Position numbers and translations under genes: made by a program
Virus record (IMG/VR): IMGVR_UViG_3300027749_002876
Span: 248,001 to 312,000 of that record
Reading direction: 5' to 3' (one strand)
DNA: 64,000 bases
Shown: positions 21,735 through 40,502 of the stretch, in pieces
Layout: each line of letters begins with the position of its first letter
Position numbering within the stretch: position 1 is the first letter of the stretch
Notes under the pieces: model-generated
What the model was told of the DNA's origin: nothing
The model's database searches: none
Seen by the model: the letters and a program-made list of their open reading frames with translations, nothing else

Positions 21735-22685
21735 TTATGCGTAACCGTAACTTGCGGCTGCTAGACTGTATCTAGCAGTACCTACTCCTGTAGTATCAGT
21801 TGCTGCCACACCTGTATTACTTACTAAGTTGGTTATTGCTGTTAGTCCCGAATTAGTTGATCCATATCCAAATATAGCAGTATCAACACCATAACTAGCG
21901 GCTGCTAGATCAGTTCTAGCAGTACCAACACCTGTTGTATCAGTTGCTACTATACCTGTATTGCTTACTTTGTTTGTTACTGACATATATGCAGAGGTAA
22001 CATCAAGCCCATAACCAAATATAGCTTGACCACTAGAACCATATCCTGCGGCTGCAAGTCCAATTCTGGCAGTACCAACACCGGTAGTATCCCCGGCAAC
22101 TACTCCTGTGTTGGACACTAAGTTGGTAATTGAATAATATCCTATACCAGATCGGTTTCCATATCCAAAAATAGCTTTATCTGTTCCGTACCCTGCGGCC
22201 GCAAGAAATCGTCTGATAGTACCGACACCTGTTGTATCTGTAGCTACCACACCTGTGTTTGATACTAGGTTAGTAAGTGAATATGTAGTGGCGTTTGCAT
22301 ATCCATAACCAAATATAGCTTTGTCAGTGCCATAACCGGCGGCTGCTAAACCAGCTCTAGCAGTACCTACTCCTGTAGTATCAGTTGCTACTACACCGGT
22401 GTTTGATACTAGGTTGGTTGCTGCCGTGTAACTAGTGCTTCCACCATAACCAAATAAGGCTTTATTTGTGCCATAACCTGCTGCCGCTAACTCATATCTA
22501 GCAGTACCAACACCTGTTGTATCAGTTGCTACTACACCGGTGTTTGATACTAGGTTGGTTATTGATACTCCGGGATTACTTCCTGCAGTACCATATCCAA
22601 ATATAGCTTTTTGTGAGGGAGGGGGAGGTAGAGTGATTGAGTAACCACCACTGAATGTTACCCCTGAAAAAACCATGTCTGCCAT
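21735..22685 (-). CDS. six-repeat Kelch-like beta-propeller protein, copy 1
   Basis: six ~48-aa repeats KAIFGYG-x(var)-SITNLVSNTGVVATDTTGVGTAR-xx-LAAAGYGTD. Confidence 0.8.
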   Translation of the reverse strand: MADMVFSGVTFSGGYSITLPPPPSQKAIFGYGTAGSNPGVSITNLVSNTGVVATDTTGVGTARYELAAAGYGTNKALFGYGGSTSYTAATNLVSNTGVVATDTTGVGTARAGLAAAGYGTDKAIFGYGYANATTYSLTNLVSNTGVVATDTTGVGTIRRFLAAAGYGTDKAIFGYGNRSGIGYYSITNLVSNTGVVAGDTTGVGTARIGLAAAGYGSSGQAIFGYGLDVTSAYMSVTNKVSNTGIVATDTTGVGTARTDLAAASYGVDTAIFGYGSTNSGLTAITNLVSNTGVAATDTTGVGTARYSLAAASYGYA

Positions 22686-22716
22686 AATATATTATCCTTT
22701 TGTTTTGTTTGTGAGA

Positions 22717-23649
22717 TTACGAACCAAATGTTGCGGCTGCAATGTAATTTCTAGCATAACCTACTCCTGTAGTATCAGTAGATACTACACCTGTATTTGA
22801 TACTAAATTGGTTATTGAAAGTGGACTACCGTTAGTGCCATAGCCAAATATAGCTTGTCCGGAGCTTCCATAGCCTGCAGCCGCCAAAGCATATCTAGTA
22901 GTACCAACACCAGTAGTATCTGTGGCAACTACGCCTGAATTAGAAACTTTATTGGTCATTGATAGTCCTGATCCAGTCCCTCCATATCCAAATATAGCTT
23001 TATCAGTTCCATAAGTTGCGGCAGCAAGATAACCTCTAGCAGTACCAACACCTGCAGTATCAGTAGCAACTACACCTGTATTTGATACTAGATTGGTTAT
23101 TGATACATCAGAAAAACCACTATCAAATCCATATCCAAAAATAGCTTTATCAGTTCCATAACCTGCGGCTGCTAATGCACCTCTAGCAGTACCTACACCT
23201 GTTGTATCTGTAGCAACTACCCCTGAATTAGAAACTTTATTGGTCATTGATATAGTATCAGATGTATACCCATATCCAAATATAGCCTTATCTGTGCCAT
23301 AACCTGCGGCAGCAAGATAACCTCTAGCAGTACCAACACCTGCAGTATCAGTAGCAACTACACCCGTGTTGCTTACTAGATTGGTTATAGATGAAGATAT
23401 ACCACTAACCAATCCATATCCAAATATTGCCTTGTCAGTGCCATAACTTGCGGCTGCCAACAAATTTCTAGCAGTACCTACACCTGAGGTATCATTAGCA
23501 ACTACACCGGTGCTTGATACAATGTTGGTTATTGATACTGCGCCGGATGAACCTGATCCATATCCAAAAATAGCTCTAATATTTGGGGGAGGTGCTGTAA
23601 TTGCAAATCCACCACTGAAATTTACACCTGAAAAAACTATGTCTGCCAT
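22717..23649 (-). CDS. six-repeat Kelch-like beta-propeller protein, copy 2
   Basis: same six-repeat architecture. Confidence 0.8.
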   Translation of the reverse strand: MADIVFSGVNFSGGFAITAPPPNIRAIFGYGSGSSGAVSITNIVSSTGVVANDTSGVGTARNLLAAASYGTDKAIFGYGLVSGISSSITNLVSNTGVVATDTAGVGTARGYLAAAGYGTDKAIFGYGYTSDTISMTNKVSNSGVVATDTTGVGTARGALAAAGYGTDKAIFGYGFDSGFSDVSITNLVSNTGVVATDTAGVGTARGYLAAATYGTDKAIFGYGGTGSGLSMTNKVSNSGVVATDTTGVGTTRYALAAAGYGSSGQAIFGYGTNGSPLSITNLVSNTGVVSTDTTGVGYARNYIAAATFGS

Positions 23650-23680
23650 ACTATGTTATCCTTTTGTTTTGTTTGTGAGA

Positions 23681-24637
23681 CTATCTACTGTAACTTGAGG
23701 CTGCTAGTTCTTGTCTAGCAGTACCGACACCAGTTGTATCCGTAGCAACTACACCCGTATTTGATACCAGGTTAGTGATTGCTGTTACTGTAGCAGATCC
23801 ATCATTTACACTACCATATCCAAAAATAGCTTTATCTGCACCGTATCCTGCGGCAGCCGGGTTTGCTCTTACGGTACCTACACCTGTAGTATCAGTAGCT
23901 ACTACACCTGTGTTACTTACTAAGTTGGTCACATTTGTAACAGGATATCCTACTCCATATCCAAATATAGCTTTATCAGTGCCATAAGTTGCGGCTCCTA
24001 ACTGACTTCTAGCGGTTCCAACTCCCGTAGTGTCTGTAGCAACTACACCCGTATTTGATACTAAGTTGGTCATTGATACTCGGGTAAAACCATTATCGGC
24101 TCCATATCCAAAAATAGCTTTGTCAGTTCCATAACCAGTGGCCGCAAGAGCTTGTCTAGCAGTACCAACACCTGTAGTATCTGTAGCAACAACACCTGTA
24201 TTTGACACTAGGTTGGTTATTGAGTACACGGTACTGCTTGTAGCACCATACCCAAATATAGCTTGTCCAGAGCTACCATATCCTGCGGCTGCTATATAAC
24301 TCCTAGCAGTACCTACACCTGTTGTATCACTAGCAACTACACCGGTGTTTGATACTAGATTGGTTACTGATTGATATACATTAGTATTATTCCTTCCATA
24401 ACCAAATATAGCTTTATCTGTACCATATACAGTGGCTGCTAGATTTACCCTAGTAGTGCCAACACCTGCAGTATCAGTAGCGACAACGCCTGTATTTGAT
24501 ACTAGGTTAGTTATTGATACATAAAGATTAGTGACAGTTGAACCATATCCAAATATTGCCTTAGCTGAGGGTGGAGGAGGTGTAATGCTAATCCCAGTAC
24601 CAATTGTTATTCCTGATCCAAATATTATATCTGCCAT
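23681..24637 (-). CDS. six-repeat Kelch-like beta-propeller protein, copy 3
   Basis: same six-repeat architecture. Confidence 0.8.
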   Translation of the reverse strand: MADIIFGSGITIGTGISITPPPPSAKAIFGYGSTVTNLYVSITNLVSNTGVVATDTAGVGTTRVNLAATVYGTDKAIFGYGRNNTNVYQSVTNLVSNTGVVASDTTGVGTARSYIAAAGYGSSGQAIFGYGATSSTVYSITNLVSNTGVVATDTTGVGTARQALAATGYGTDKAIFGYGADNGFTRVSMTNLVSNTGVVATDTTGVGTARSQLGAATYGTDKAIFGYGVGYPVTNVTNLVSNTGVVATDTTGVGTVRANPAAAGYGADKAIFGYGSVNDGSATVTAITNLVSNTGVVATDTTGVGTARQELAASSYSR

Positions 24638-24665
24638 ACTATCCTTTTATGTTATTTTTTATATA

Positions 24666-25031
24666 CTACACTTCAAGCCAAGATGTTGTATCTTCATCCC
24701 ATTTATACATTTTATCATCTGTTGGCATTGGTACTGGTGAGTCCCACAAGCATTTAGTTTCATTTAATGTCCATGAATTGTAAGGCTTTGGTGGTATGAA
24801 TGCGTCAAGTGTTTCATCATAAGTGTACCCAATACCAGCATAGTTTTTGCGATACGGTGTACCACTGTTTGAATGAACACCACCATAAGTGTTGTAACTT
24901 GTGCGCTTGCAGATTTGACCGCGGACTTCACCGTAATGTTGTTCCCAATCAATATTGTTTTCCCCTTCATCTTTACCTACTATAACTTCAGTAACAATAT
25001 TATTTTCATTTAAAAATGCGTAATGTGCCAT
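24666..25031 (-). CDS. conserved phage protein, possible fibre/appendage assembly factor
   Basis: MAHYAFL...RKNYAGIGYTYD...FIPPKP...W; follows Gly-rich gene; ATAAATA at 25059-25065. Confidence 0.55.
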   Translation of the reverse strand: MAHYAFLNENNIVTEVIVGKDEGENNIDWEQHYGEVRGQICKRTSYNTYGGVHSNSGTPYRKNYAGIGYTYDETLDAFIPPKPYNSWTLNETKCLWDSPVPMPTDDKMYKWDEDTTSWLEV

Positions 25032-25072
25032 GTTTTTTCCTTTTTTAATTATTAATACTATTTATGCTAAAT

Positions 25073-27283
25073 TTAGAAGGTAATAGTTCCTGTACCGGCA
25101 GTAAATCTATACACTCTGTAGCCAGAACGAGATGGTTGGTCATAAGTTAAACCACTACCAATTGTTAGGGCAGGGTAACTGGTTGGATAAGCAATAATAA
25201 CTACTCCTGATCCACCGTTCCATCCAACGCTACCGGCATTAGAAGTTCTAGATCCGCCTCCGCCGTTGCCTGAATTTGCTGTAGCATCTCCACTAACAGT
25301 ATTAGACCAATAAGCCTGACCCCCTGCCGAATATGCAACATCTGAACCAGTAATGCCTTGTAAGGCGGCGCCTCCTCCGGTACCGCCTCCGGTTACACCG
25401 GTATCTATATCAGTTTTAGATTGACCAACTCCATTAGAACCACCTCCACCGGATCCTATCCAACCTCTATAGACACCTACATTAGTTGATGTACCTCCAT
25501 TAAATCCTTGACCGGATGTTGCTGTTCCACCTGCCATAGCTCCCGGAGTGTTGGTTGAACCATAAGAAGCTCCGCCTCCAGAACCACCACTACCACCGGG
25601 GTTAGTTAAGCCTGCCCCATATCCTCCACCGATTGCGGTATATCCAGTTAAAACTGAGTTAGTTCCGGCGCCAGCATTACCAGAGGTTTGTTGTCCTGCA
25701 CTTCCTCCTGCGCCCACGGTGACTGTATAGGAACCACTGAATGAAGCTGTAGCATAACCACCACCTACCATACCACCAGCACCTCCACCACCACCAGAAC
25801 CACCGCCTCCACCTGCTACCACAAGATATTCAGAAAGAGTTGAAGGTGCTTCTGTAGTAATACTATTACTTGGTGCACTTGGACTACTCGTACCAACGCT
25901 ATTTGTTGCTGTAACTGTAAATGTATAACTAGTAGAACCAGTTAAACCAGTCATATTAATAGTACCACTACCTGCTTGGCTTAATGTACCGGTGATTCCA
26001 CCTGGACTACTTGTTGCTGTATAACTTGTAATTGTAGCACCGCCGTTGCTTGCTGGTTGAGTAAATGAAACTGTAGCTGTAGTTGCACCAGTAGCTGTTG
26101 CTGTACCTATTGTTGGAGCTCCGGATACTGTAGGTGCTGCAACAGTAATTGTTCCTGTACCCGCAGTAAATGTATATATTGTGTTTCCACCTGAAGTTGT
26201 TTTAGTATATGTTAGTCCTACACTAATTGATGATAAGTCAGCATAACTAGATGGATAGGAAATGATAACAATACCAGAGCCACCGTTAACTGTTTGTCGT
26301 TGTGGTGATACACCGCCGGCGCCTCCACCTGTATTTGTAGTTCCGTCTGTAGCTGATGCGGCTCCTGCTCCTCCACCTTGCCCACCAGTACCTCCGCCAC
26401 CTAAACCGCCAATACCCTTAAGTGTATTCCATGTTGTGTAATCTGCACCTGCACCACCACCACCTGCATAGTATGTAGATGTTCCGGTAATACTTGAAGC
26501 AAGACCTACACCTCCATTACCTGCTTGCCCTGCTGTTAAGTTGGCACCAACTGCGCCGGCGCCACCGCCTCCACCGCCTCCGCGATAACTGCCATTTTGA
26601 GAATCACCGCCGTTATTACCTTGACCAACTGTGCCAGTACCGCCATAATCAAAATATCCGCCAGCTCCTCCACCCGAACCACCATTCAAGCCATTAGAAT
26701 CAGCATAAGCACCACCGCCACCTAATGAAGTAATTGATGAGAACACGCTATCACCTCCATTTGCAGTTCCAACTCCACCTGCACCAACCGTTACTGTAAA
26801 TGTACCACTGACAGAAAATCCTGAAGCTGTTCTGTACCCGCCGGCTCCGCCTCCTCCGCCATGATATGCACCAGCACATCCGCCGCCACCTGCGACTACA
26901 AGGTAATTAACAGATGATGGTGCTGACGGTGCTGATGTAGTAATACTATTACTTGCACTACTTGCATTACTTGTTCCTATTGCATTGGTTGCTGTAACTG
27001 TAAATGTATAACTAGTAGAACCAGTTAAACCACTAACAGTAATAGTACCACTACCTGCTTGACTTAATGTACCGGTGATTCCACCGGGACTGCTTGTAGC
27101 TGTATAACTTGTTATAGTTGAGCCGCCATTACTTGCAGGTTGAGTAAATGCCACTGTGGCTGTAGTTGAACCAGTAGACGTTGCAGTACCTATTGTAGGT
27201 GCACCCGGTACTGAGGGTGGTGGAGGTGTAATACTAACTCCACCTGAAATTGATATTCCGCCTGTAAATACGATATCCGCCAT
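25073..27283 (-). CDS. virion-associated protein with two FN3 + glycine-rich domain units
   Basis: Start moved to MADIVF at 27283 (AAGGAA RBS); 2x [PGAPTIGTAT...YTFTVTATN FN3 + YLVVAGGG...GGSGIVII Gly-rich domain]. Confidence 0.8.
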   Translation of the reverse strand: MADIVFTGGISISGGVSITPPPPSVPGAPTIGTATSTGSTTATVAFTQPASNGGSTITSYTATSSPGGITGTLSQAGSGTITVSGLTGSTSYTFTVTATNAIGTSNASSASNSITTSAPSAPSSVNYLVVAGGGGCAGAYHGGGGGAGGYRTASGFSVSGTFTVTVGAGGVGTANGGDSVFSSITSLGGGGAYADSNGLNGGSGGGAGGYFDYGGTGTVGQGNNGGDSQNGSYRGGGGGGGAGAVGANLTAGQAGNGGVGLASSITGTSTYYAGGGGAGADYTTWNTLKGIGGLGGGGTGGQGGGAGAASATDGTTNTGGGAGGVSPQRQTVNGGSGIVIISYPSSYADLSSISVGLTYTKTTSGGNTIYTFTAGTGTITVAAPTVSGAPTIGTATATGATTATVSFTQPASNGGATITSYTATSSPGGITGTLSQAGSGTINMTGLTGSTSYTFTVTATNSVGTSSPSAPSNSITTEAPSTLSEYLVVAGGGGGSGGGGGAGGMVGGGYATASFSGSYTVTVGAGGSAGQQTSGNAGAGTNSVLTGYTAIGGGYGAGLTNPGGSGGSGGGASYGSTNTPGAMAGGTATSGQGFNGGTSTNVGVYRGWIGSGGGGSNGVGQSKTDIDTGVTGGGTGGGAALQGITGSDVAYSAGGQAYWSNTVSGDATANSGNGGGGSRTSNAGSVGWNGGSGVVIIAYPTSYPALTIGSGLTYDQPSRSGYRVYRFTAGTGTITF

Positions 27284-27320
27284 GATATATTCTTCCTTTA
27301 TAGTATTTAGCAAAAAACAA

Positions 27321-27342
27321 AAAAGGCTCAAAAAGAGCCTTT
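27321..27342 (-). terminator. intrinsic terminator, AGGCTC/GAGCCT family
   Basis: AAAAGGCTC-AAAAA-GAGCCTTT hairpin. Confidence 0.75.
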
Positions 27343-27362
27343 TTATTCAATCTCAATGGAGA

Positions 27363-28247
27363 TTAGAAGCGATGTGTTACACCAACTCCAACTTGTTTTA
27401 CGTCATTTGTTGTGCCTTTAGCGTCAACATTACGATAGTTGACACCTAAACTAGTACGCTTACTGAAGTTATAATCAGCACCCATTGCATAAGCTTTTAC
27501 ATCAGTATTTGTTTTACCATAACTAGCTTTTGCTGTGATTGCACCAAATTGCTGGCTTGCACCAATCAAATCACCAGTACGTGCTACGGCACCTTTGTCA
27601 TCACTATGTGTGTAAAATACTTGTGTATTGCCTAATTTTGCGCTACCAGCATACACTGTGCTTTTCTCAACACCTTGAGTATATTGTGCAACTGTTGCGT
27701 TAATACCAAACAATTTTGCACTTGCACTATAGCTAGTTGCTTCTGTACCTACACCATTTTGTGTGCGGTCATAAGTTGCAGTTACACCCTTCATTGGTGT
27801 TAATGCAAAGAATGTACCATTGCTGATACGCAGACCACGCAAGTTATGTACATCACCTGCAACACTACCATACAATGTGCCAAAAGCGTCATTGTTAGTG
27901 ATTGCTAAAAAGTGACTGTGTAGATTGCGACCCAAGTCAACACTACCAATACTATTTACTAAGCCGATTGTTGATTGACGATCACCTAGTTTAGTTGCGG
28001 CGCCACCTGTTGGATCATTAGCTGCCAAACTTGTATCTAATACTACACGAGCCTTCAAACCTGCACCAATGTTTTCTGTAGCAGAAAGTGTGATGTTGCT
28101 TGTTGGGTCAGTAGCTAGACTTGTTTTGCTAATAGCACCAGTTTTAGTATTGTCAACAAATTCGCTGATTTTACCATTTAAACTAACTTGTGCTGTAGCA
28201 ACCATTGTTGTTGCTGCCAATAATGTCGCTATTGCGATTTTCTTCAT
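27363..28247 (-). CDS. Gram-negative trimeric porin
   Basis: signal peptide MKKIAIATLLAATTMVATA, ENIGAGLKA, DRQSTIGL..GSVDLGR, GADYNFSKRT, C-terminal VGVTHRF beta-signal. Confidence 0.88.
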   Translation of the reverse strand: MKKIAIATLLAATTMVATAQVSLNGKISEFVDNTKTGAISKTSLATDPTSNITLSATENIGAGLKARVVLDTSLAANDPTGGAATKLGDRQSTIGLVNSIGSVDLGRNLHSHFLAITNNDAFGTLYGSVAGDVHNLRGLRISNGTFFALTPMKGVTATYDRTQNGVGTEATSYSASAKLFGINATVAQYTQGVEKSTVYAGSAKLGNTQVFYTHSDDKGAVARTGDLIGASQQFGAITAKASYGKTNTDVKAYAMGADYNFSKRTSLGVNYRNVDAKGTTNDVKQVGVGVTHRF

Positions 28248-28361
28248 AAGATTTTCCTTTAAAAATAAACCTGATTTCTCAGGCTAGACTAATATTTATG
28301 TTGTTTTTTATTGTTGATATAAAATAGTTGTTTGCGTAATAACAACGAGTTTAACGTGGAT

Positions 28362-28381
28362 AAAGGCTCTTTCGAGCCTTT
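28362..28381 (-). terminator. intrinsic terminator, AGGCTC/GAGCCT family
   Basis: AAAGGCTC-TTTC-GAGCCTTT hairpin. Confidence 0.7.
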
Positions 28382-28399
28382 GTTTTTGTGGTTGTTTGA

Positions 28400-29341
28400 T
28401 TATGCGTAACCGTAACTTGCGGCTGCTAGTCCACTTCTAGCAGTACCGACACCTGTAGTATCTGTAGCAACTACCCCGGTGTTTGATACTAGGTTGGTCA
28501 ACGATAGATAACTTTCTCTACCCCCGTATCCAAATATAGCAGTATCAACTCCATAGCCAGCGGCTGCTAGATAAGTTCTACCAGTACCGACAGCGGTAGT
28601 ATCTGTAGCAACAACTCCTGTGTTTGATACTAGGTTGGTCATTCCGTAATACGGGCTACCACCAGCTCCTAAACCAAATCCAAAGATAGCTTTATCGGTG
28701 CCAAAAGTTGCGGCGGCTAACGCATATCTGGCCTGCCCTACACCTGTTGTATCTGTAGCAACTACACCTGTATTTGATACTTTATTGGTTACTGATGTAG
28801 TGGTAGGCGTAGCAGAGTATCCATATCCAAAAATAGCTTTATCGGTACCATAACCTGCGGCTGCAGGGTTACTCCTAGCAGTGCCAACACCGGCTGTGTC
28901 GTTAGCAACTACACCTGTGTTACTTACTAGATTGGTTATTGCTGTTCTAACCCAGCTACCATTATTGTATATACCATAACCAAAGATGGCTTTATCTGTT
29001 CCATAGCCTGCGGCTGCTAGTCCACTTCTAGCAGTACCGACACCTGTAGTATCTGTAGCAACTACACCGGTATTTGATACTTTGTTGGTTATTGCGGTCT
29101 GTGGAGTACCATATCCATATATAGCTTTATCACTACCGTAGCCTGCGGCAGCTGGTTCGCTTCTAGCTGTACCAACACCTGTAGTATCTGCGGCAACTAC
29201 CCCTGTGTTACTTACTAGATTGGTCATTGATAAAGAAGGACCATTAGTACCATATCCAAATATTGCCTTACTTGTTGGGGGAGGAGGTTGTGGTGTTACA
29301 CTCAATCCACCCGTAAATGTTAGTCCACCTGTAAAATCCAT
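28400..29341 (-). CDS. six-repeat Kelch-like beta-propeller protein, copy 4
   Basis: same six-repeat architecture. Confidence 0.8.
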   Translation of the reverse strand: MDFTGGLTFTGGLSVTPQPPPPTSKAIFGYGTNGPSLSMTNLVSNTGVVAADTTGVGTARSEPAAAGYGSDKAIYGYGTPQTAITNKVSNTGVVATDTTGVGTARSGLAAAGYGTDKAIFGYGIYNNGSWVRTAITNLVSNTGVVANDTAGVGTARSNPAAAGYGTDKAIFGYGYSATPTTTSVTNKVSNTGVVATDTTGVGQARYALAAATFGTDKAIFGFGLGAGGSPYYGMTNLVSNTGVVATDTTAVGTGRTYLAAAGYGVDTAIFGYGGRESYLSLTNLVSNTGVVATDTTGVGTARSGLAAASYGYA

Positions 29342-29372
29342 AATATATTATCCTTTTGTTTTGTACTTCATA

Positions 29373-30317
29373 TTAAGTTGATCCGTAACTTGCGGCGGCT
29401 AGATGATACCTAGCAGTACCCACACCGGTTGTATTTGTAGCTACTACACCAGTATTTGATACCAGGTTGGTTATGGATGTGACATTAATCACACTACTAT
29501 ATCCATATCCAAATATAGCTTTATCATTATTATAAGTTGCGGCAGCTAATCCAAGCCTTGCAGTACCAACTCCAGTTGTATCCGTAGCAACAACACCAGT
29601 GTTTGATACTAGATTAGTTACTGCTGTATAACTAACGCCACCATTAAGAAAGCCGTAGCCAAATATGGCTTTATCAGTTCCATAACCTACGGCTGCTAGC
29701 TCACCTCTAGCAGTACCAACACCGGTAACATCATTGGCTACTACACCCGTATTTGATACTAGGTTAGTTAGTGAATAAGTTACGCTAGATTGAGTAGTAC
29801 CATAACCAAATATAGCAGTACCAGTTCCATAAGTTGCGGCTGCCAATCCAACTCTAGCTGTACCAACACCTGTAACATCATTTCCAACAACACCCGTATT
29901 TGATACTAGGTTGGTCATTGAATAAACGCCACCACCACCATAACCAAAAATAGCTTTATCTGTACCATAACCAGTGGCCGCAAGATTATTTCTAACAGTA
30001 CCAACACCAGTTGTATCTGTAGCAACAACACCTGTATTTGACACTAGATTAGTTATTGATACAGTACTTGCTCCAGTATATCCATATCCAAATATAGCTT
30101 TGTCGTTTCCATAGCCTGCGGCTGCTAGATAGTATCTAGCAGTGCCAACACCGGTAGTATCACCTGCAACTACACCTGTATTTGATACTTTGTTAGTCAT
30201 TGATACTGAGGGTGTACCTCCATATCCAAAAATAGCATATGTACTATATGAGGGTGGAGGTAGAGTTACTGAGTAACCACCACTAAATGTTACACCTGAA
30301 AAAACCATATCTGCCAT
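29373..30317 (-). CDS. six-repeat Kelch-like beta-propeller protein, copy 5
   Basis: same architecture; GATAAATA at 30336-30343 and AAGGAG RBS. Confidence 0.8.
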   Translation of the reverse strand: MADMVFSGVTFSGGYSVTLPPPSYSTYAIFGYGGTPSVSMTNKVSNTGVVAGDTTGVGTARYYLAAAGYGNDKAIFGYGYTGASTVSITNLVSNTGVVATDTTGVGTVRNNLAATGYGTDKAIFGYGGGGVYSMTNLVSNTGVVGNDVTGVGTARVGLAAATYGTGTAIFGYGTTQSSVTYSLTNLVSNTGVVANDVTGVGTARGELAAVGYGTDKAIFGYGFLNGGVSYTAVTNLVSNTGVVATDTTGVGTARLGLAAATYNNDKAIFGYGYSSVINVTSITNLVSNTGVVATNTTGVGTARYHLAAASYGST

Positions 30318-30352
30318 AATATATCTCCTTTAATGTATTTATCAGAAAAGAA

Positions 30353-30375
30353 AAAAGGCTCAAAAAGAGCCTTTT
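30353..30375 (-). terminator. intrinsic terminator, AGGCTC/GAGCCT family
   Basis: identical hairpin to 27321-27342. Confidence 0.75.
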
Positions 30376-30392
30376 ATAGTAGCATATATTGA

Positions 30393-31292
30393 TTACGCTA
30401 CGAATGGAGTGTATTCAATACCAGTTGTTGCTAGTCCAACTAAACCAATAGTTGTTTCAAAACTAGCTAATTCACTAGCAATAACTAATACATCAGCTTG
30501 ACTATACTTGTTAGTAGTCATCCAGTTTGTCAATGCAGTTACATCAGCTAATGTAGCAGTTGTACCCATTACATTTTTGTAAACGTGCTTGATAAATGTC
30601 TCATCGCTAACACCACCGGCATCAGTTTTGTAAGTGTCAGTAGCTAATAATGCTGTAGCTAACTGTTTGTTTGTCCAACCTGAATCAGCTAAATAGATAC
30701 CAATACCTTCATAAGCTTTGGTAACATCAGCAACTCCTAATGCGGCAGCTAGTAATGCGTATACATCACCTGCACGACCTGTAGCATCATAAGCAATAGC
30801 TTTGTCTGTGAACACAACACGTTCGTGGTCAGCAAGTTTGATTTCTAAATTACTAACTAATGTGCTGGCTAATGTTACCGCACTTGTAGTTTTAGTTGTA
30901 GTGAACTCTGTACTTGCACCGCCTGCTACATAAGTGTCAATACCAGTTGTACCAGTAACATCAACTACTACATCAACTGTGCCATCGCCAACACGACCTG
31001 TACCTACTACACCAAATGTAGCAATCTTACCTAATGTACCAACAGTAGCAACTGTAACGATTAAGTTGTTAGCAACTGTACCGCCTAATGCTGTACCAGC
31101 AAGAGTGATGGTATCACCAGCTAAGTAGCCGTGACCTGCACTTGCGGCTAATGAATCTAATACAACGGAATATACTCCGTTAGTTTTTGTAACATCAAAT
31201 GCGGCTTCAACACCTGCGCCACCTGTTAATCCAGTGATGTTTTGATAGGTAGTGTTTACCGGTTTGTCTTTGATTGTAATTGTAGTTGTCAT
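30393..31292 (-). CDS. S-layer-like protein with DUF4214-like C-terminal domain
   Basis: Start moved to MTTTITIK (AAGGAA RBS); ERVVFTDKAIAYD and SDETFIKHVYKNVMG resemble DUF4214 proteins; TTGACA-18-TATACT at 31325-31354. Confidence 0.6.
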   Translation of the reverse strand: MTTTITIKDKPVNTTYQNITGLTGGAGVEAAFDVTKTNGVYSVVLDSLAASAGHGYLAGDTITLAGTALGGTVANNLIVTVATVGTLGKIATFGVVGTGRVGDGTVDVVVDVTGTTGIDTYVAGGASTEFTTTKTTSAVTLASTLVSNLEIKLADHERVVFTDKAIAYDATGRAGDVYALLAAALGVADVTKAYEGIGIYLADSGWTNKQLATALLATDTYKTDAGGVSDETFIKHVYKNVMGTTATLADVTALTNWMTTNKYSQADVLVIASELASFETTIGLVGLATTGIEYTPFVA

Positions 31293-31384
31293 AAATTTCC
31301 TTTTTATATAAAAATAACTCAATAAGTATATAGCGTTTCTACTAGTACTGTCAATACTAATATTTTACGTAGGTGTGATTAGGA

Positions 31385-32065
31385 TCACATGTTGGCATGA
31401 AATATAGCTACTTTAACCAAACTATCTATGCTATTGACTAAAGGAATACTGTTTTGTTCTGTTTCTTTAACCGCTAGTGGTAATTCTGTACAACCTAGTA
31501 CTACTGCACTTGCCCCACGAACAATCAAACTATCTACCACCGGCATCAACATATTATGTGAGTTAACCATATCTCCTGCCTTAATTAAATCTATAGCAGG
31601 TTGTACTATGTTATTCATTTCTTCTATACTAGGAACAATACAATCCCAATCAGTTAAACGATTTTGATATAAGCCTAATTCAATTGTAGCTTGTGTTCCC
31701 ATTATACCTATTGTACCAGTAACATTTATATCACGTAATGAATTAGCTACACTATCTACAATGTGTAAAATAGGAACTTTAAATTTAACTAATTCATCAT
31801 ACCAGTAATGCGCTGTATTGCAAGGTATGACAATTATAGTACATCCAAGTGATTTCAATACTTGTATACCTTGTAGTAAGTATGGTAGTGGTCTGTCATC
31901 ACCATTACGTATACTTGTACTACGATCAGGTGTACGTGGTTCATTCCATAACACGAATGGAATATGTTCTTGGTCACAACTTGCAGGTGTTTGTTGTATA
32001 AGTCTGTTTATAAATTCAGCACTGGCTGCTGGACCCATTCCACCTAGTATACCTAAACGTTTCAT
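31385..32065 (-). CDS. aspartate/glutamate racemase family protein
   Basis: GILGGMGPAAS, both catalytic cysteines PCNTAH and GCTELP. Confidence 0.92.
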   Translation of the reverse strand: MKRLGILGGMGPAASAEFINRLIQQTPASCDQEHIPFVLWNEPRTPDRSTSIRNGDDRPLPYLLQGIQVLKSLGCTIIVIPCNTAHYWYDELVKFKVPILHIVDSVANSLRDINVTGTIGIMGTQATIELGLYQNRLTDWDCIVPSIEEMNNIVQPAIDLIKAGDMVNSHNMLMPVVDSLIVRGASAVVLGCTELPLAVKETEQNSIPLVNSIDSLVKVAIFHANM

Positions 32066-32670
32066 TTTTTATTAAACAATAAACTAGAAGCGATTATCAT
32101 CGCTGTTTGTGCGGCTTCTACATCTGTGGGCTGTTCTTTCCAACCTACACTAATCTGTCCAATGAACACGCCGGGTTCAGCTGGTACGCTAATACGACAC
32201 ATATAGTTTACACCGTATTCTTTGTATACAAAGCCAATAAGACTTTGTGGTTTTGAATATGGACTACAAGGAATCTTACCTGACATTAAACCAATGACAT
32301 CATTGTTGTTGTCATAGTTTTTACTAAATAATCCAACTTCTAACCCGTCATTTCTTTTATCTCTACCACCATTGCGTGTAGCTAAGTAAACAACTTTTCG
32401 TGTGTTAATTAATGTGTTGACTTCAAGAAAGGCAACCATTTCTACTTCAGTATTTTTTAATAAGAAATTGTATGCCTCATCATACTTACCGTTCATTTTA
32501 GGTAATGCTTGCTGGGCACGATAACTTGCTAAAAAGGCATCTTTTTCCGTATAAACTATCCAACCACCAAAGCCTAGTATACAGAGAAACACAACGGTAA
32601 ATAGGCGAAATGGACTTTCGCCTATATAGGTTAATAAACTAAAGAGAAAATCTTTAAGTTTGTCCACCAA
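32062..32670 (-). CDS. single-TM protein resembling T4 holin T (periplasmic GAF-like domain)
   Basis: 202 aa; amphipathic N-terminus, one TM, WIVYTEKDAFLASYR and GVNYMCRI..GVFIGQISVGWK resemble T4 gpT segments as recalled. Confidence 0.55.
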   Translation of the reverse strand: MVDKLKDFLFSLLTYIGESPFRLFTVVFLCILGFGGWIVYTEKDAFLASYRAQQALPKMNGKYDEAYNFLLKNTEVEMVAFLEVNTLINTRKVVYLATRNGGRDKRNDGLEVGLFSKNYDNNNDVIGLMSGKIPCSPYSKPQSLIGFVYKEYGVNYMCRISVPAEPGVFIGQISVGWKEQPTDVEAAQTAMIIASSLLFNKK

Positions 32671-33928
32671 TAGCTACCTCTTTGTCACAGACAAAAGCTG
32701 TTACTGCTACGTTACCATGTACGTGACTTGCTGTGCGGATCATATCCATTAATGGATCAACCGCAATTAGTAATACTAATACAGCCTCACTTGGTAGTTT
32801 TAGTAAGTCACAAACAACTGCTACTGTAGCAACTGTAAGAATACCAGTTGTTCCTGCACTTGCTAATCCAGCTAAGATACTACCAAATAACACAACTAAT
32901 AAACCAGTTACTCCCATAGGTGCACCGTAGATGTTGGCAATAAACACTGTAGCAATTGCGTAGTATACAATACTACCAATACGGTTAACTGTGAAACTTA
33001 GTGGTACGGTTAGTTCTACACCAGTTCTATCAAAATGTAATTTGTGTAGTGATTCTTGTGCATAGGGTATACATGCTAGACTACTACGTGAACTAACAGC
33101 AACAATCAATGTTTCTTTAGTCTCACGAATAACAGTCATTAGGCTCAATCCTGAACGTTGCCAAATAACAATAGTGCCAGCAATAACAACAAGTAATCCA
33201 CCAATGGCCTGTTGCATGATAAACTCAACCATGGTTAAGAAAATACCAACTCCAACCTTACCAACTTGGCTACTAATCATTGCCAATAATGCAAACGGTA
33301 GAAAGTAGTTTAAGAATTTAAAAATACTGATACTAGCCTGTTGTACGCTCTTTAGTATATCCACTAGCATTTCTTGACCAGTCGTTTTTAAGTTACCTAA
33401 TGCAATACCAAAGATTAAACAGAAGATAACAATCTTTAAGCTTTCGCCGGCGGCTAGTGTATTAAAAATATTTTCTGGAATAAACTTCTGTGCCATCTGC
33501 ATTGGGTCAACGTGTGGTGCAACAGGCATTGGTTCTTTTAGAGTAATGTTGAGATCGCTTCCAGATTCTTTATCGTTAACAATTGCACCAAGTTGTGCTT
33601 GTTTTGCAGGAGTCATTTCGCTGCCGGTCAATGCAACAGTACCAACACCAATTACTGCAGCCAAGAACATACTACCAACAAAACCAATGATAATTTTGCG
33701 TATCATTGCGGCACTGCCTTCTTTTTGTAGTAAACTGATAACACCAACCAAAATAGTTGCAAGTAAGAAAGGTATTACCACAACTTTAAGCAAGCTGATG
33801 TAAATTCCACCAACACTTTCAAAATTCATACTTTGTGCAGGTGCATATACTCCTGCCAATACTCCAAGTATAATTGAACTTAAAATAGTCCACGGACTAG
33901 ATAAGAAGTTTTTTAAATTAAATTTCAT
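32654..33928 (-). CDS. dicarboxylate/amino acid:cation symporter (DAACS family)
   Basis: multiple TM helices, YISLLKVVVIP, IPENIF, SSRSSLACIP, AVDPLMDMIRT. Confidence 0.92.
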   Translation of the reverse strand: MKFNLKNFLSSPWTILSSIILGVLAGVYAPAQSMNFESVGGIYISLLKVVVIPFLLATILVGVISLLQKEGSAAMIRKIIIGFVGSMFLAAVIGVGTVALTGSEMTPAKQAQLGAIVNDKESGSDLNITLKEPMPVAPHVDPMQMAQKFIPENIFNTLAAGESLKIVIFCLIFGIALGNLKTTGQEMLVDILKSVQQASISIFKFLNYFLPFALLAMISSQVGKVGVGIFLTMVEFIMQQAIGGLLVVIAGTIVIWQRSGLSLMTVIRETKETLIVAVSSRSSLACIPYAQESLHKLHFDRTGVELTVPLSFTVNRIGSIVYYAIATVFIANIYGAPMGVTGLLVVLFGSILAGLASAGTTGILTVATVAVVCDLLKLPSEAVLVLLIAVDPLMDMIRTASHVHGNVAVTAFVCDKEVAIGGQT

Positions 33929-33940
33929 TTTATTTCCTAA

Positions 33941-34759
33941 TTATTTCTTTTCAGCTTTGTATCGTTCCATTAACTTTTTAGTGTCAATGTTGTTGTATTC
34001 ATTTTTAATAACGTAATTAATAATGCTTAACAATTGCAGTGATTTAGGATTTACTGCGATAGCAATATTATCAACACTGTCACTGATTGTGATACTCTTT
34101 GTGCTAATTGCGGCTTCTGGTTTTTCAAAAGCGATTTTCTTAATCTCAAATTCATCACGATAAGCGGCTGCGATATCACCACGTGTAACTTTGTCAATAA
34201 TCACATCCCATTTATCTTCCGGGAGAAATACAGCATTAGGGAAATTAGTACGTGCAAATGTGTCATAGCTTGAGTTGCGAATGAAACTTATTTTACCATT
34301 GAAATTTCTAATCACTTGATATACTTCACGACCCTGACTGTTTTGGCTTAACCATAAACGATTGATAACTAAACTTTGTCTAAGTTTAATATAAGGATCA
34401 CTGAATCTAACTACTTGTAGTCTGGGCCCAGTTACAGATAATTTACTAACTGCAACGTCGGCACGACCATCTCTTACTTGCTCAACGACTTCGGCAAAAC
34501 TTTCTGCATCTCGTCTAAACTGTACTGGAACTCCAAGCATTACGCCAATTCTCCGTGCAATTTCAACGTCAAGACCATGTATATCATCCTCGCCCCCACT
34601 GAAGAAGGGAGGGTTATCTTTTTTGGTCATTGCCACAATAAGAACGTTTGCTTTCTTAATTGCGGCAATATCATTGGGTAGTGGTACGGTACTAGTTGGT
34701 AATTGTGCGTGGACAACTGAACTAAACAATACACATAATAATAGTAGTAGTTTTTTCAT
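33941..34759 (-). CDS. periplasmic amino-acid substrate-binding protein (family 3)
   Basis: signal peptide, DNPPFF, GLDVEIARRIG, GRADVAVSKLSVTGPR, FSDPY; ATAAATA 7 nt upstream. Confidence 0.9.
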   Translation of the reverse strand: MKKLLLLLCVLFSSVVHAQLPTSTVPLPNDIAAIKKANVLIVAMTKKDNPPFFSGGEDDIHGLDVEIARRIGVMLGVPVQFRRDAESFAEVVEQVRDGRADVAVSKLSVTGPRLQVVRFSDPYIKLRQSLVINRLWLSQNSQGREVYQVIRNFNGKISFIRNSSYDTFARTNFPNAVFLPEDKWDVIIDKVTRGDIAAAYRDEFEIKKIAFEKPEAAISTKSITISDSVDNIAIAVNPKSLQLLSIINYVIKNEYNNIDTKKLMERYKAEKK

Positions 34760-34801
34760 AGTGTTGTATTTATGCTATGAAAATACTAACTTAGCTAAAA
34801 T

Positions 34802-35422
34802 CTACTTATTTGCTAACGGATTGTCCATAGCTTTTTGTATTTTGTTATCAACTTCTCTTTTTAGTGTCTCTACTTCACGGTTAATTTCTCTACGTGCCGC
34901 AGTAAATTCACTGTTAATTTCTTTACGGGTTGATTCCATATCCTTGCGAATTGTGTTAGCTTCGTTTCTAGCTCTTTCTAAGTCTTCACGAACGGCCTTA
35001 CGCATATCACGCATTTCGCTTTCAGTTTCACGCTGTGCGTTCTTAACACTACGTTCTACTTGTTCTGTGACAGTTTCATTACGGCGAATATCATTCTTTA
35101 AGTCAGTTTTGATATCACGGGTGTAATCAGCACCTTTTTGACTGTTTTCCTCAATGACAGCTAATCGCTTATCAAATCCACTCAAGTCTGGTGCACTGTA
35201 TTCAGCTATCTTTTTCTTCATACCCACATAGTCTTTATACACTTCAAAGGCTCCGTATAATCCACCTAGCGTAGATGACACGATTGTGGCTGCTACCATA
35301 AGTTTAGCTGGGGTAAATTCATACCCACCAATACTGATAACAGTATCTTTACTAGCATACTTTTTTGCGGCTGCTTCAAGTTCATCAACTTTTGCGTTTA
35401 CGTCTTTTATTTCTTCTGTCAT
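34802..35422 (-). CDS. membrane-anchored coiled-coil protein
   Basis: hydrophobic segment, long R/E/K heptads, ends DNPLANK. Confidence 0.7.
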   Translation of the reverse strand: MTEEIKDVNAKVDELEAAAKKYASKDTVISIGGYEFTPAKLMVAATIVSSTLGGLYGAFEVYKDYVGMKKKIAEYSAPDLSGFDKRLAVIEENSQKGADYTRDIKTDLKNDIRRNETVTEQVERSVKNAQRETESEMRDMRKAVREDLERARNEANTIRKDMESTRKEINSEFTAARREINREVETLKREVDNKIQKAMDNPLANK

Positions 35423-35437
35423 TTTTTTCTCCTAAGT

Positions 35438-35626
35438 TTAATTCCAGCCCTGTGGCCATTTTGAATTGTTTGTTTTTTGGTCAGCCAACATTCTGATCCA
35501 TTCTTTACGCACAGCAAGATCATGCTTCATACGTTCTAATTGATCTAGTGAGTTATCACTATAAAAGATATAGTAAAATGGAATACCAAATCCAAAACCC
35601 AACATAAAATAAGCAATGTAGTCCAT
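35438..35626 (-). CDS. small membrane protein
   Basis: 62 aa, N-terminal hydrophobic helix. Confidence 0.6.
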   Translation of the reverse strand: MDYIAYFMLGFGFGIPFYYIFYSDNSLDQLERMKHDLAVRKEWIRMLADQKTNNSKWPQGWN

Positions 35627-35627
35627 A

Positions 35628-39423: not shown

Positions 39424-39494
39424 TTTTATTATCATCCTCTAGAGATAATATTTATTTGTTTTTTAGTTGAGAAATATCAAGCTTTATTAAATAG

Positions 39495-39515
39495 GAAAGG
39501 CTCTTAGAGCCTTTC
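39495..39515 (-). terminator. intrinsic terminator, AGGCTC/GAGCCT family
   Basis: GAAAGGCTC-TTA-GAGCCTTTC hairpin. Confidence 0.7.
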
Positions 39516-39532
39516 GTTTTGACTTTGATAAA

Positions 39533-40471
39533 TTATATACTATAATTTGAGGCGGCTAGTGCATATCTAGCAGTACCAACACCAGTAACGTCATTAGCAA
39601 CTACACCGGTGTTTGATACTAGGTTAGTTATTGCTGTTACACTTGCAGGTGAAAGTATCCTTCCATATCCAAATATTGCAGTATCTAAACCATAACCTGC
39701 GGCTGCTAGAATATATCTAGCGGTACCAACACCAGATGTATTAGTTGCAACTACACCTGTATTTGATACTTTATTGGTTATTGAAACATTTGGATTTCCA
39801 CCATAACCAAAAATAGCTTTATCTGTGCCATAAGTTGCGGCTGCTAATTGAGTTCTGGCAGTACCAACACCTGCAGTATCAGTAGCAACTACACCGGTAT
39901 TACTTACTAGATTGGTTATTGAAACTGGACCAACTGCGCCGTCTTCTCCAAATCCAAAAATTGCTTTATCTGTACCATAACCTGCGGCTGCTAGTGCATA
40001 TCTAGCAGTACCAACACCGGAAACGTCGGTGGAGACTACACCTGTGTTACTTACTAGGTTAGTTACTGCTGAGTAGGAGTAGGTATATCCATATCCAAAT
40101 ATAGCTTTATCAGTACCATAACCTGCCGCTCCTAGTTGACTTCTAGCAGTCCCTACTCCCGTAGTATCTGTAGCAACTACCCCTGTATTACTTACTAAAT
40201 TGGTCATTGATACAAGTCCGGAGTTGTTAAATCCATATCCAAATAGTGCTTTATCAGTACCATAGCCCGCTGCCGCTAGTTCATCTCTAGCAGTACCGAC
40301 TCCTGTTGTATCGGTTGCAACAACCCCAGTGTTACTTACTAGATTAGTTATTGATATATATGATGGGCTGGAATATCCATATCCAAAGATTGCTTTATAA
40401 GAGGGTGGGGGAGGTGCTGTAATTGCAAATCCACCACTGAAATTTACACCTGAAAAAATTATGTCTGCCAT
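39533..40471 (-). CDS. six-repeat Kelch-like beta-propeller protein, copy 6
   Basis: same architecture; GATAAATA at 40491-40498 and AAGGA RBS. Confidence 0.8.
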   Translation of the reverse strand: MADIIFSGVNFSGGFAITAPPPPSYKAIFGYGYSSPSYISITNLVSNTGVVATDTTGVGTARDELAAAGYGTDKALFGYGFNNSGLVSMTNLVSNTGVVATDTTGVGTARSQLGAAGYGTDKAIFGYGYTYSYSAVTNLVSNTGVVSTDVSGVGTARYALAAAGYGTDKAIFGFGEDGAVGPVSITNLVSNTGVVATDTAGVGTARTQLAAATYGTDKAIFGYGGNPNVSITNKVSNTGVVATNTSGVGTARYILAAAGYGLDTAIFGYGRILSPASVTAITNLVSNTGVVANDVTGVGTARYALAASNYSI

Positions 40472-40502
40472 ACTATATTATCCTTTAATGTATTTATCAA
40501 AA

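What the first reader, a model, noticed from the sequence alone, without database searches (positions are those of the whole stretch)
21735..40475. Mosaic relationships among propeller genes point to ongoing recombination or gene conversion
Seen: copy 1 (21735) shares its N-terminus with copy 5 (MADMVFSGVTFSGGYS.TLPPP) but its last 30 nt (TTATGCGTAACCGTAACTTGCGGCTGCTAG on +) with copy 4. Copies 2 and 6 share a near-identical ~65-nt 5' end. Copy 2 contains an internal two-repeat duplication (GTARGYLAAA...SMTNKVSNSG twice). The YGSSGQAIF variant occurs at different repeat positions in copies 1, 2 and 3. Intergenic spacers (TATCCTTTTGTTTTGT) are conserved. Inference: repeat-level shuffling through the conserved framework, plausibly by the phage's own UvsX/UvsY, yields combinatorial diversity without a reverse transcriptase.
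Basis: partly seen in the sequence, partly recalled or inferred. Interest (0 to 1): 0.72.

Follow-up and report, generated by a model that had tools for sequence, protein, structure and literature searches.

The report
Phage multigene family of hypervariable propellers
A giant freshwater phage carries 17 old, deeply diverged copies (six in this window) of a six-bladed lectin-like propeller protein with unique variable loops, and the patchwork similarities between copies are mostly family background, not signs that the copies are still swapping pieces.

Summary
Six minus-strand genes of about 310 aa each encode a 22-aa leader, a proline linker and six 47-53-aa repeats.

The window is part of a 524,565-bp phage contig that holds 17 such genes. 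The model is a Kelch-type six-bladed propeller. The family profile weakly matches Photorhabdus PLL/PHL lectins.

Reasons the copies do not look like active recombination partners:
- The copies are only 67-72% identical in DNA, and synonymous sites are near saturation.
- Repeats cluster neither by gene nor by position.
- Framework sites are in linkage equilibrium.
- All 98 variable loops are unique.
- Long exact tracts between different copies are no commoner (6.9 per 1000 repeat pairs) than between this phage and other phages (8.0).
- Such tracts are about 15 times commoner between blades of one gene (115 per 1000).

The real recombination footprints are therefore intragenic, and the two largest here copy a variable dipeptide between blades: c2 R2/R4 share 60 nt and c4 R2/R6 share 57 nt. 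There is one good inter-copy candidate, the c2/c6 5' end (65 of 66 nt identical).

Strains of a sister lineage that differ by 0.85-3.5% overall have almost identical propeller genes.

Best reading: a gene family that grows and shrinks by duplication and loss, encoding probable glycan- or receptor-binding modules. It is not an ongoing shuffling system.

The parts
21735..22685 (-). c1, 316-aa leader plus six-blade propeller protein; last gene of the c3-c2-c1 unit
   Evidence: ORF and translation; repeat parsing
22717..23649 (-). c2, 310 aa; carries the internal R2-R3 / R4-R5 duplication
23681..24637 (-). c3, 318 aa
28400..29341 (-). c4, 313 aa; its leader class is shared with c10 and c11 elsewhere in the genome
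29373..30317 (-). c5, 314 aa; first gene of the c5-c4 unit
39533..40471 (-). c6, 312 aa; single-gene unit between two hairpins; the copy that was modelled
22686..22716 (-). 31-nt spacer between c2 and c1 with ribosome-binding site (AAAGGA)
23650..23680 (-). 31-nt spacer between c3 and c2
29342..29372 (-). 31-nt spacer between c5 and c4
23305..23364 (-). c2 repeat-2 framework tract, identical over 60 nt to 23017-23076 (repeat 4); an intragenic conversion or duplication
   Evidence: null maximum 48 nt
23017..23076 (-). c2 repeat-4 partner of the 60-nt tract
29009..29065 (-). c4 repeat-2 framework tract, identical over 57 nt to 28418-28474 (repeat 6); includes the variable dipeptide SG
28418..28474 (-). 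c4 repeat-6 partner of the 57-nt tract
23584..23636 (-). c2 leader tract, 53 nt identical to c6 at 40406-40458; best candidate for conversion between copies
40406..40458 (-). c6 partner of the 53-nt leader tract
25073..27283 (-). 736-aa FN3 / glycine-rich protein that starts with the same leader (MADIVFTGGISISGGVSITPPPP)
30336..30344 (-). TGATAAATA, resembling a T4 late promoter, 18 nt before the c5 start and just after a hairpin
   Evidence: the function is inferred
40491..40499 (-). TGATAAATA before c6
21696..21717 (-). terminator-like hairpin after c1
28358..28385 (-). terminator-like hairpin after c4
39495..39515 (-). terminator-like hairpin after c6
2338..3405 (-).
   Evidence: phrog_97, E=7.7e-70

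Best explanation
The region holds six of 17 paralogues in a roughly 525-kb freshwater phage.

Architecture of each protein:
- A conserved leader of about 22 aa, then a proline linker, then a six-bladed Kelch-type propeller distantly related in sequence to the Photorhabdus PLL/PHL lectins.
- Every blade has a nearly invariant framework: KAIFGYG ... S-I-TNLVSNTGVVATDTTGVGTAR-xx-LAAAGYGTD.
- Every blade has two hypervariable elements: a loop of 3-12 aa after FGYG, and the two residues after GTAR.
- In a four-stranded meander these two elements sit in the first-to-second and third-to-fourth strand connections, so they lie on the same face (inferred from topology, not measured on coordinates).

Gene organisation: small units with conserved 31-nt spacers carrying the ribosome-binding site. 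Several units have an upstream GATAAATA motif that resembles a T4 late promoter, and several end in a downstream hairpin.

Likely function (inferred): a repertoire of binding modules, probably recognising glycans or receptors, attached by the common leader. In other phages the same propeller is the C-terminal domain behind Mtd_N, ConA-like lectin or FN3 domains, or in a glycine-rich-domain protein.

How the diversity arose (shown by comparison):
- Old duplications and gene gain and loss. The syntenic slot holds 1, 2 or 5 copies in related phages.
- Divergence concentrated in the loops.
- Occasional short (40-85 nt) conversions, mostly between blades of one gene, confined to the framework plus the dipeptide.

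The patchwork similarities between copies are mainly retained consensus states and saturation. They are not current exchange.
For: Fold and family:
- The model has 24 strands in six blades, and its best solved match is a Kelch domain at TM 0.72.
- The ESM Atlas holds this exact protein at pLDDT 0.89, and its neighbours there are all viral except the distant eukaryotic Kelch clusters.
- The family profile hits PLL2 at E=1.4e-4 and PHL at E=8.7e-4, sharing the GTDxA[IL][FW] motif.
- Homologues are fused to Mtd_N and Laminin_G_3, to FN3 in syntenic relatives, and one BFVD match is annotated as a glycine-rich-domain protein.

Variability: entropy is concentrated in the loop and in the two post-TAR residues.

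Age and lack of structure:
- Copies are 67-72% identical in DNA and 50-59% at third positions.
- The body tree is star-like, with terminal branches near 0.3 and internal branches below 0.07.
- On the repeat tree, label changes are close to random both for gene and for position.
- Framework identity is 0.76 whatever the gene or repeat position.
- r2 is 0.0135 against an expectation of 0.0125 beyond 6 nt.

No homogenisation within the genome.

Intragenic tracts are enriched about 15-fold.

Copy number differs among syntenic relatives whose flanking genes are 83-95% identical in protein (two weaker pairs 76-80%).

Stability: independent assemblies are identical, and sister-lineage strains are almost identical in these genes.
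Against: - PHI on all sites is significant (p<0.001 at w=50), though the effect is only 3% and it vanishes at third positions for 16 genes.
- Leader classes show more synonymous identity (pooled 0.71) than the bodies of the same pairs (0.57). The gene in L009 that shares the c1/c5 leader sits at background identity in its body, while its flanking genes are at 0.64-0.84 codon identity. Leader and body therefore have different histories or rates, which needs some past module exchange or gene replacement.
- One internal tract between c4 and c8 reaches global p=0.005.
- The function is not shown. The genes lie among metabolic and transport genes rather than tail genes. The promoter motif is only weakly enriched (6 matches against 2.2 expected). 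No virion data exist.
Confidence: 0.7

Rival explanations
1. The phage's own recombination machinery keeps exchanging repeats between the copies through the conserved framework, creating new combinations of loops.
For: - A UvsX-like gene is present and no reverse transcriptase was found.
- Repeats cluster neither by gene nor by position.
- PHI on all sites is significant.
- The c2/c6 leader is nearly identical.
- SSGQ occurs at different positions.
Against: - No loop is shared by any two of the 98 repeats.
- Shared tracts between copies are no commoner than between different phages, and codon identity is likewise equal.
- Framework sites are in linkage equilibrium.
- The repeats are only 76% identical and rarely share more than 30 nt exactly, which is a poor substrate for homologous recombination (general knowledge; not tested here).
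- Strains and independent assemblies show no variation in these genes.
Confidence: 0.08
2. Whole genes or bodies are exchanged between co-infecting related phages, using the conserved leader and the conserved 3' end and spacer as crossover anchors. The locus turns over by cassette replacement rather than by shuffling inside the genome.
For: - A gene in L009 has the c1/c5 leader at 85-89% DNA identity, but its body is at family background (63-81% per repeat), while its flanking genes are clearly orthologous.
- Copy number at the slot is 1, 2 or 5.
- Divergence between sister strains is patchy, and the propeller block lies in a low-divergence patch.
- The 3' end and downstream sequence are conserved across many copies.
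Against: - No donor sequence was identified.
- AU tests on the body do not reject most leader-defined clades, so simple loss of signal remains possible.
- The anchors are short, about 60 nt and about 50 nt.
Confidence: 0.3
3. The mosaics are assembly chimeras formed between repeated genes.
For: - Short-read contigs from public runs break inside these genes, and none spans a whole copy.
Against: - A chimera would carry segments 100% identical to its parents. c1 differs from c5 at 15 of 84 nt around the start, and apart from the 53-nt c2/c6 leader tract no window copy shares more than 42 nt exactly with another copy.
- The same sequence was assembled in the 171-kb and the 525-kb records.
- For other copies, contigs from other metagenomes are identical.
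Confidence: 0.03
4. The propellers are not virion or adhesion modules. They act inside the infected cell, for example as Kelch-like adaptors that bind varied host or defence proteins, as poxvirus Kelch proteins do.
For: - The best structural matches are substrate-adaptor Kelch domains.
- The genes lie among auxiliary genes: porin, racemase, transporter.
- Each unit has its own promoter-like motif and terminator, in the style of accessory genes inserted between core genes.
Against: - Sequence kinship is with secreted lectins.
- Fusions are to tail-fibre-type and lectin domains.
- The late-type promoter motif points the other way.
- No BTB or other adaptor domain is present.
Confidence: 0.2

Closest known systems
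Photorhabdus PLL / PHL beta-propeller lectins (PDB 6RFZ, 5MXE; PMC5584973, PMC6943638, PMC12203525)
   Same: - They are the only solved proteins found by the family profile (E=1.4e-4 and 8.7e-4).
- The repeats are of similar length and share the GTDxA[IL][FW] and S..GV[IV] motifs.
- P. laumondii also carries several paralogues (PMC12203525).
- PHL binds sugars between blades (PMC5584973).
   Different: - These have seven blades, against six here.
- No Pfam match reaches threshold.
- Their Trp-rich sugar-site residues are not evidently conserved here.
- The phage proteins have hypervariable loops and an N-terminal leader.
- Sugar binding is untested for the phage proteins.
Kelch-repeat six-bladed propellers (for example KLHL17 6HRL, KLHL12, Keap1)
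   Same: Same fold and blade number in the model (TM 0.64-0.72).
   Different: About 14% sequence identity. No Kelch Pfam hit. No BTB/BACK partner domains.
Highly conserved WD40 repeats of fungal NLR genes such as het-d and het-e of Podospora (PMC11761791, abstract listed; repeat exchange and diversifying selection are from my own knowledge)
   Same: A propeller repeat scaffold with a few hypervariable positions on one face. Sequence exchange between repeats occurs.
   Different: - There, repeats are very alike in DNA and repeat number varies (own knowledge).
- Here, repeats are 76% identical, the number is fixed at six in 16 of 17 genes, and exchange between genes is at background.
Diversity-generating retroelements acting on phage receptor-binding proteins (Mtd of Bordetella phage BPP-1; tentaclins, PMC10743442)
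   Same: Hypervariable binding surface on a phage protein. Some homologues carry the Mtd_N domain.
   Different: No reverse transcriptase in 525 kb. No template/variable repeat pair. The fold is a propeller, not a C-type lectin.
Phages that carry several receptor-binding proteins at once (multi-tailspike or branched-fibre phages such as CBA120 and phi92; from my own knowledge)
   Same: Several paralogous binding modules share a common N-terminal attachment segment.
   Different: Seventeen small monomer-sized propellers, with no recognisable tailspike or fibre shaft. Attachment to the virion is not shown.

Membership tests
Kelch-type six-bladed beta-propeller (fold) | Six four-stranded antiparallel blades around a central axis | tested here: met
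   24 strands in six repeats. Foldseek TM 0.72 to KLHL17 and other Kelch domains. The Atlas model of the same protein has pLDDT 0.89.
Kelch repeat (sequence family, Pfam Kelch_1 and relatives) | Match to a Kelch Pfam model above threshold | tested here: not met
   No Pfam family at E<=0.1 for five of the six window copies, and only two sub-threshold unrelated hits for c4.
PLL-family propeller lectins (PF26607 Beta-prop_PLL) | Detectable sequence similarity to PLL/PHL | tested here: met
   The profile of 38 family members hits PLL2 at E=1.4e-4, PHL at 8.7e-4 and a further Photorhabdus laumondii protein (8Q7U) at 0.058, with no other significant hit.
PLL-family propeller lectins (PF26607 Beta-prop_PLL) | Seven blades | tested here: not met
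   Six repeats in 16 of 17 genes and in all 29 parsed homologues.
PLL-family propeller lectins (PF26607 Beta-prop_PLL) | Pfam model match above threshold | tested here: not met
   No hit in this Pfam copy for the window proteins or for P0075 and P0078. The Atlas reports PF26607 in 30% of one related cluster.
PLL-family propeller lectins (PF26607 Beta-prop_PLL) | Binds fucose or other sugars between blades | not testable with these tools
   Needs glycan arrays or co-crystals.
Diversity-generating retroelement target | Reverse transcriptase in the genome | tested here: not met
   PF00078 is absent from the 524,565-bp contig, and the control genomes gave hits.
Diversity-generating retroelement target | Template/variable repeat pair that differs mainly at adenines | tested here: not met
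   No exact match longer than 63 nt among the 17 genes. The matches that exist lie in the conserved framework, not in the loops.
Paralogues undergoing gene conversion between copies (concerted evolution) | Copies within a genome more alike than copies in different genomes; excess of shared tracts | tested here: not met
   Codon identity 0.568 against 0.556. Tracts of 30 nt or more: 6.9 against 8.0 per 1000 repeat pairs.
Intragenic repeat homogenisation (blade-to-blade conversion or duplication) | Excess of long identical tracts between repeats of one gene | tested here: met
   115 per 1000 within genes against about 7 between genes. Tracts of 63, 60 and 57 nt against a null maximum of 48.
Highly conserved, shuffling repeat arrays (fungal NLR type) | Repeats nearly identical in DNA, with variable repeat number | tested here: not met
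   Mean framework identity is 0.76. The repeat number is six in all but the truncated c15.
T4-type late gene | TATAAATA-type late promoter upstream and a T4-type late sigma factor in the genome | tested here: inconclusive
   A GATAAATA-type motif lies about 18-22 nt before the start of c5, c6, c7, c8, c12, c15 and c17, with near variants before c9 and c13. Enrichment in the window is weak (6 against 2.2). I did not search for the late sigma factor.

The most novel reading that the evidence does not exclude
The phage carries a germline-style repertoire of 17 lectin-like propellers, with 98 different loops on one face. All carry the same short leader, which docks them, together with the FN3/glycine-rich protein that has the same leader, onto a common site of the virion. 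This would give multivalent or interchangeable recognition of host surface glycans. Blade-to-blade conversion would keep the scaffold uniform while selection keeps every loop distinct. That would be a route to binding diversity in a phage that needs neither a retroelement nor tail-fibre mosaicism.
Probability: 0.2. Interest if true: 0.8.

Novelty: new variant of a known kind. Interest (0 to 1): 0.42.

Why it matters
As stated, the finding would have been a new diversity-generating mechanism in phages. The evidence does not support that.

What remains is a large protein family found so far only in viruses and, as far as my searches went, not described in the literature. One search found more than 2,400 homologues, almost all unnamed.

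The family is a lectin-like six-bladed propeller with an antibody-like split between an invariant framework and hypervariable loops. It is expanded to 17 copies in a 525-kb freshwater phage.

If these are host-recognition modules, they bear on how very large phages achieve host range. They could also serve as a natural scaffold for engineering binders.

The analysis also shows that apparent mosaicism in saturated repeat families can arise without recombination. A between-genome control separates the two cases.

Tried and rejected
- **Megablast and tblastn against the deposited phage collection:** no match. The repeats may have been masked, or close records withheld.
- **Pfam on the propellers:** no family at threshold. 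PHROGs gave only a weak unnamed family.
- **UvsY (PF11056) in the 525-kb contig:** nothing found, but the control genomes also gave no hit, so this is uninformative.
- **Public read data:** only Logan contigs were available. They fragment inside the repeats. The many 'joints' have short sides (21-58 nt) and extra letters between them, as expected from other family members in the metagenome. I do not count them as chimeras.
- **AU tests of leader-defined clades on the body alignment:** too little signal to show incongruence. Only c4+c10+c11 gave p=0.015, which does not survive correction for eight tests.
- **PHI:** significant on all sites, but the effect is 3% and may come from adjacent codons. 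It is not significant at third positions for the 16 genes. I gave it little weight.
- **Framework identity of single repeat pairs:** the top value, 0.904, is about what the maximum of the repeat-pair comparisons (1,128 pairs in the eight-gene set) should be by chance. I used exact-tract length and adjacency instead.
- **Positional orthology of loops:** none found.
- **Literature searches:** I looked for a described phage propeller family of this kind and found nothing specific.
- **Not done:** I did not fetch the whole 525-kb contig, did not search for a T4-type late sigma factor, and could not inspect model coordinates to confirm that the variable elements share one face.

Full report
**What is there**

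Between 21735 and 40471 the minus strand carries six open reading frames of 310-318 aa:
- c1 21735-22685
- c2 22717-23649
- c3 23681-24637
- c4 28400-29341
- c5 29373-30317
- c6 39533-40471

Each begins with a leader of about 22 aa (MADxxFSGxxFSGGxxIT) and a run of prolines. Six repeats of 47-53 aa follow.

Every repeat has three parts:
- a 7-aa front (KAIFGYG);
- a loop of 3-12 aa with no conservation;
- a 34-aa back (S-I-TNLVSNTGVVATDTTGVGTAR-xx-LAAAGYGTD).

Entropy across 96 repeats is near zero except in the loop and in the two residues after TAR.

**Genome context**

The window lies in a 170,963-bp IMG/VR record. Over the 20 kb compared, that record is base-for-base identical to part of a 524,565-bp contig rated complete by CheckV.

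That contig holds 17 family members. Sixteen have six repeats and one is a truncated two-repeat gene.

**Fold and kinship**

- An AlphaFold2 model of c6, built on a 38-sequence alignment, has mean pLDDT 73.7 and 24 strands in six blades.
- Foldseek places it with Kelch domains (KLHL17 TM 0.72, about 14% identity) and with uncharacterised proteins of uncultured tailed phages.
- The ESM Atlas holds this exact protein at pLDDT 0.89. All its neighbours there are viral except the distant eukaryotic Kelch clusters. One neighbouring cluster is named after the PLL lectin propeller.
- No Pfam model matches at threshold.
- A profile of the family, searched against all PDB sequences, finds only the Photorhabdus lectins PLL2 (E=1.4e-4), PHL (8.7e-4) and a further Photorhabdus laumondii protein (8Q7U, 0.058). 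The match shares a GTDxA[IL][FW] motif.
- Those lectins are seven-bladed and bind fucose between blades (PMC5584973). The phage proteins have six blades, so I treat them as distant relatives, not as members.

**Clues to function**

- In other phages the same propeller is a C-terminal domain behind Mtd_N, behind a ConA-like lectin domain or behind other N-terminal extensions.
- In syntenic relatives it sits behind an FN3 domain.
- In this window the 736-aa FN3/glycine-rich protein (25073-27283) starts with the same leader.
- Seven copies (c5, c6, c7, c8, c12, c15, c17), all but c15 and c17 opening a transcription unit, carry a GATAAATA-type motif about 18-22 nt before the start codon, and c9 and c13 carry near variants; in c5, c6, c12 and c15 it follows directly after a hairpin. 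c1, c4, c6 and c12 are followed by hairpins. The motif resembles the T4 late promoter (my own knowledge). Its enrichment in the window is weak.
- The neighbouring genes are a porin, an Asp/Glu racemase, a dicarboxylate symporter and a solute-binding protein, not tail genes.

I infer a displayed binding module, probably for glycans, at moderate confidence. An intracellular adaptor role remains open.

**Checking the listed observations**

All are literally true (see the observation check). Three exceed chance:
- The c2/c6 5' end: 65 of 66 nt identical, with a 53-nt exact tract.
- The c2 internal duplication: repeat 2 against repeat 4 share 60 nt exactly, and repeat 3 against repeat 5 match at 84 of 102 nt. 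The loop between them is unrelated.
- The spacers: an exact 17-mer occurs three times against 0.08 expected.

The other three do not exceed family background:
- The c1/c5 leader match is older, with six of 20 same-residue codons differing, and is borderline (global p=0.09).
- The 30 nt shared by c1 and c4 is the family's consensus 3' end.
- SSGQ is a minor junction variant found across the family in other phages. It is written with two different Ser-Ser codon pairs and has flanks at background identity.

**Is there recombination between copies?**

- The copies are 67-72% identical in DNA and 50-59% at third positions.
- A maximum-likelihood tree of the repeat bodies is a star, with terminal branches near 0.3, internal branches below 0.07 and one supported pair.
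- It neither recovers nor, by AU test, convincingly rejects the leader-defined pairs.
- Across repeats, framework identity is 0.76 whether two repeats share a gene, share a position or share neither.
- On a tree of 96 repeats, the labels 'gene' and 'position' change almost as often as shuffled labels: 73 against 77.5, and 56 against 62.6.

But the same pattern is expected from saturation, so further tests were needed.

1. **Linkage between framework sites.** It is at the independence expectation beyond 6 nt (r2 0.0135 against 0.0125). There are no shared haplotype blocks.
2. **Between-genome control.** Repeats of different copies in this genome are no more alike at synonymous codons than they are to repeats from other phages (0.568 against 0.556).
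3. **Exact tracts of 30 nt or more, per 1000 repeat pairs.** The rate is 6.9 between copies of this genome, 8.0 between this phage and others, and 115 between blades of one gene.
4. **Loop reuse.** None of the 98 loops recurs, and loops carry no positional signal.
5. **Population stability.**
   - Contigs from other metagenomes are identical over 21 kb, including other copies. One 7.5-kb contig differs at three bases, all outside the propeller genes.
   - In a sister lineage, strains that differ by 0.85% and 3.5% overall differ by 2-3 bases in 2.2 kb of propeller genes.

A tract test that allows mismatches finds globally significant fragments only in leaders, plus one internal c4/c8 segment. 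It finds none at third positions. PHI is significant on all sites with a 3% effect, but not at third positions for the 16 genes.

**What recombination did happen**

- Long identical tracts are strongly enriched within genes. The exact lengths are:
  - c8 R1/R2: 63 nt;
  - c2 R2/R4: 60 nt;
  - c4 R2/R6: 57 nt;
  - c11, c12, c7 and c1 R1/R2: 42-52 nt.
  The null maximum is 48 nt.
- They lie almost entirely in the framework, reaching at most the first loop bases in c11 and c2. In c2 and c4 they copy the variable dipeptide after TAR. They homogenise rather than diversify.
- Pooled over leader-class pairs, same-residue codon identity is 0.71 in leaders against 0.57 in bodies.
- The gene in relative L009 that has the c1/c5 leader (85-89% DNA identity) has a body at family background, while the flanking genes are plainly orthologous at codon identity 0.64-0.84.
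- The slot between the conserved ATPase gene (19830-20933) and the 309-aa gene at 30393-31322 holds 5 propellers here and 2 in the L038 lineage.
- The slot is rearranged in L003, which has 1 propeller beside the ATPase gene. L009 shows 2 before its contig ends.

So the locus turns over by gene gain, loss and probably replacement, and leader and body have partly separate histories. This is past, gene-level mosaicism typical of phage accessory regions. It is not repeat-level combinatorial shuffling.

**Mis-assembly**

This is unlikely. No copy contains segments identical to two putative parents, and the sequence is reproduced in independent records. Short public contigs cannot span a copy, so long reads would still be welcome.

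**Verdict**

The object is a new viral variant of lectin/Kelch-like propellers, organised as a large and old multigene family.

Noticed in passing
whole window; G001 = IMGVR_UViG_3300027749_002876: The 171-kb record that contains the window is an identical piece of a 524,565-bp viral contig rated 100% complete. The phage is therefore a megaphage-sized genome. It encodes a UvsX-like recombinase (2338-3405) and a large terminase subunit (7971-9518).
   Followed up: partly
window 45302-57254: A cluster of at least seven genes matches radical-SAM families in PHROGs: 45302, 49709, 50913, 53184, 54368, 56304 and neighbours. This is unusual density for a phage.
   Followed up: no
window 27363-34759: An apparent amino-acid uptake and conversion set lies between the propeller genes: porin (27363-28247), Asp/Glu racemase (31385-32065), sodium:dicarboxylate symporter (32654-33928) and a family-3 solute-binding protein (33941-34759). 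Relatives conserve the porin, racemase and symporter at 85-91% protein identity.
   Followed up: partly
window 21401-21373 and 21072-21044, minus strand: Two perfect 12-of-12 sigma-70 consensus promoters (TTGACA-17-TATAAT) lie just downstream of the c1 terminator, ahead of an 84-aa ORF and the ATPase gene. Public-run depth spikes about 10-fold over 21274-21410, suggesting a segment shared by many phages in those samples.
   Followed up: no
G001:C1:454912-455283 (outside the window): c15 is a 123-aa family member with a leader and only two repeats. It is either a truncated copy or a remnant.
   Followed up: no
window 25073-27283: The FN3/glycine-rich protein carries the same N-terminal leader and proline linker as the propellers. 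The leader is therefore a module shared between different domain types. In relatives the slot holds two such glycine-rich genes.
   Followed up: partly
window 24666-25031: A 121-aa ORF (phrog_7759, unknown function) sits immediately upstream of c3. It recurs beside propeller genes in unrelated loci (L050, L073, L059-L067) at 43-59% identity. It may be a functional partner.
   Followed up: no
run X6 laid on window 21368-25045: A 2022 metagenome holds short contigs that are 100% identical to parts of c1 and c3, next to contigs 92-98% identical in flanking and other propeller parts. This is either a related strain with patchy divergence or a mixture. The short contigs cannot resolve it.
   Followed up: no
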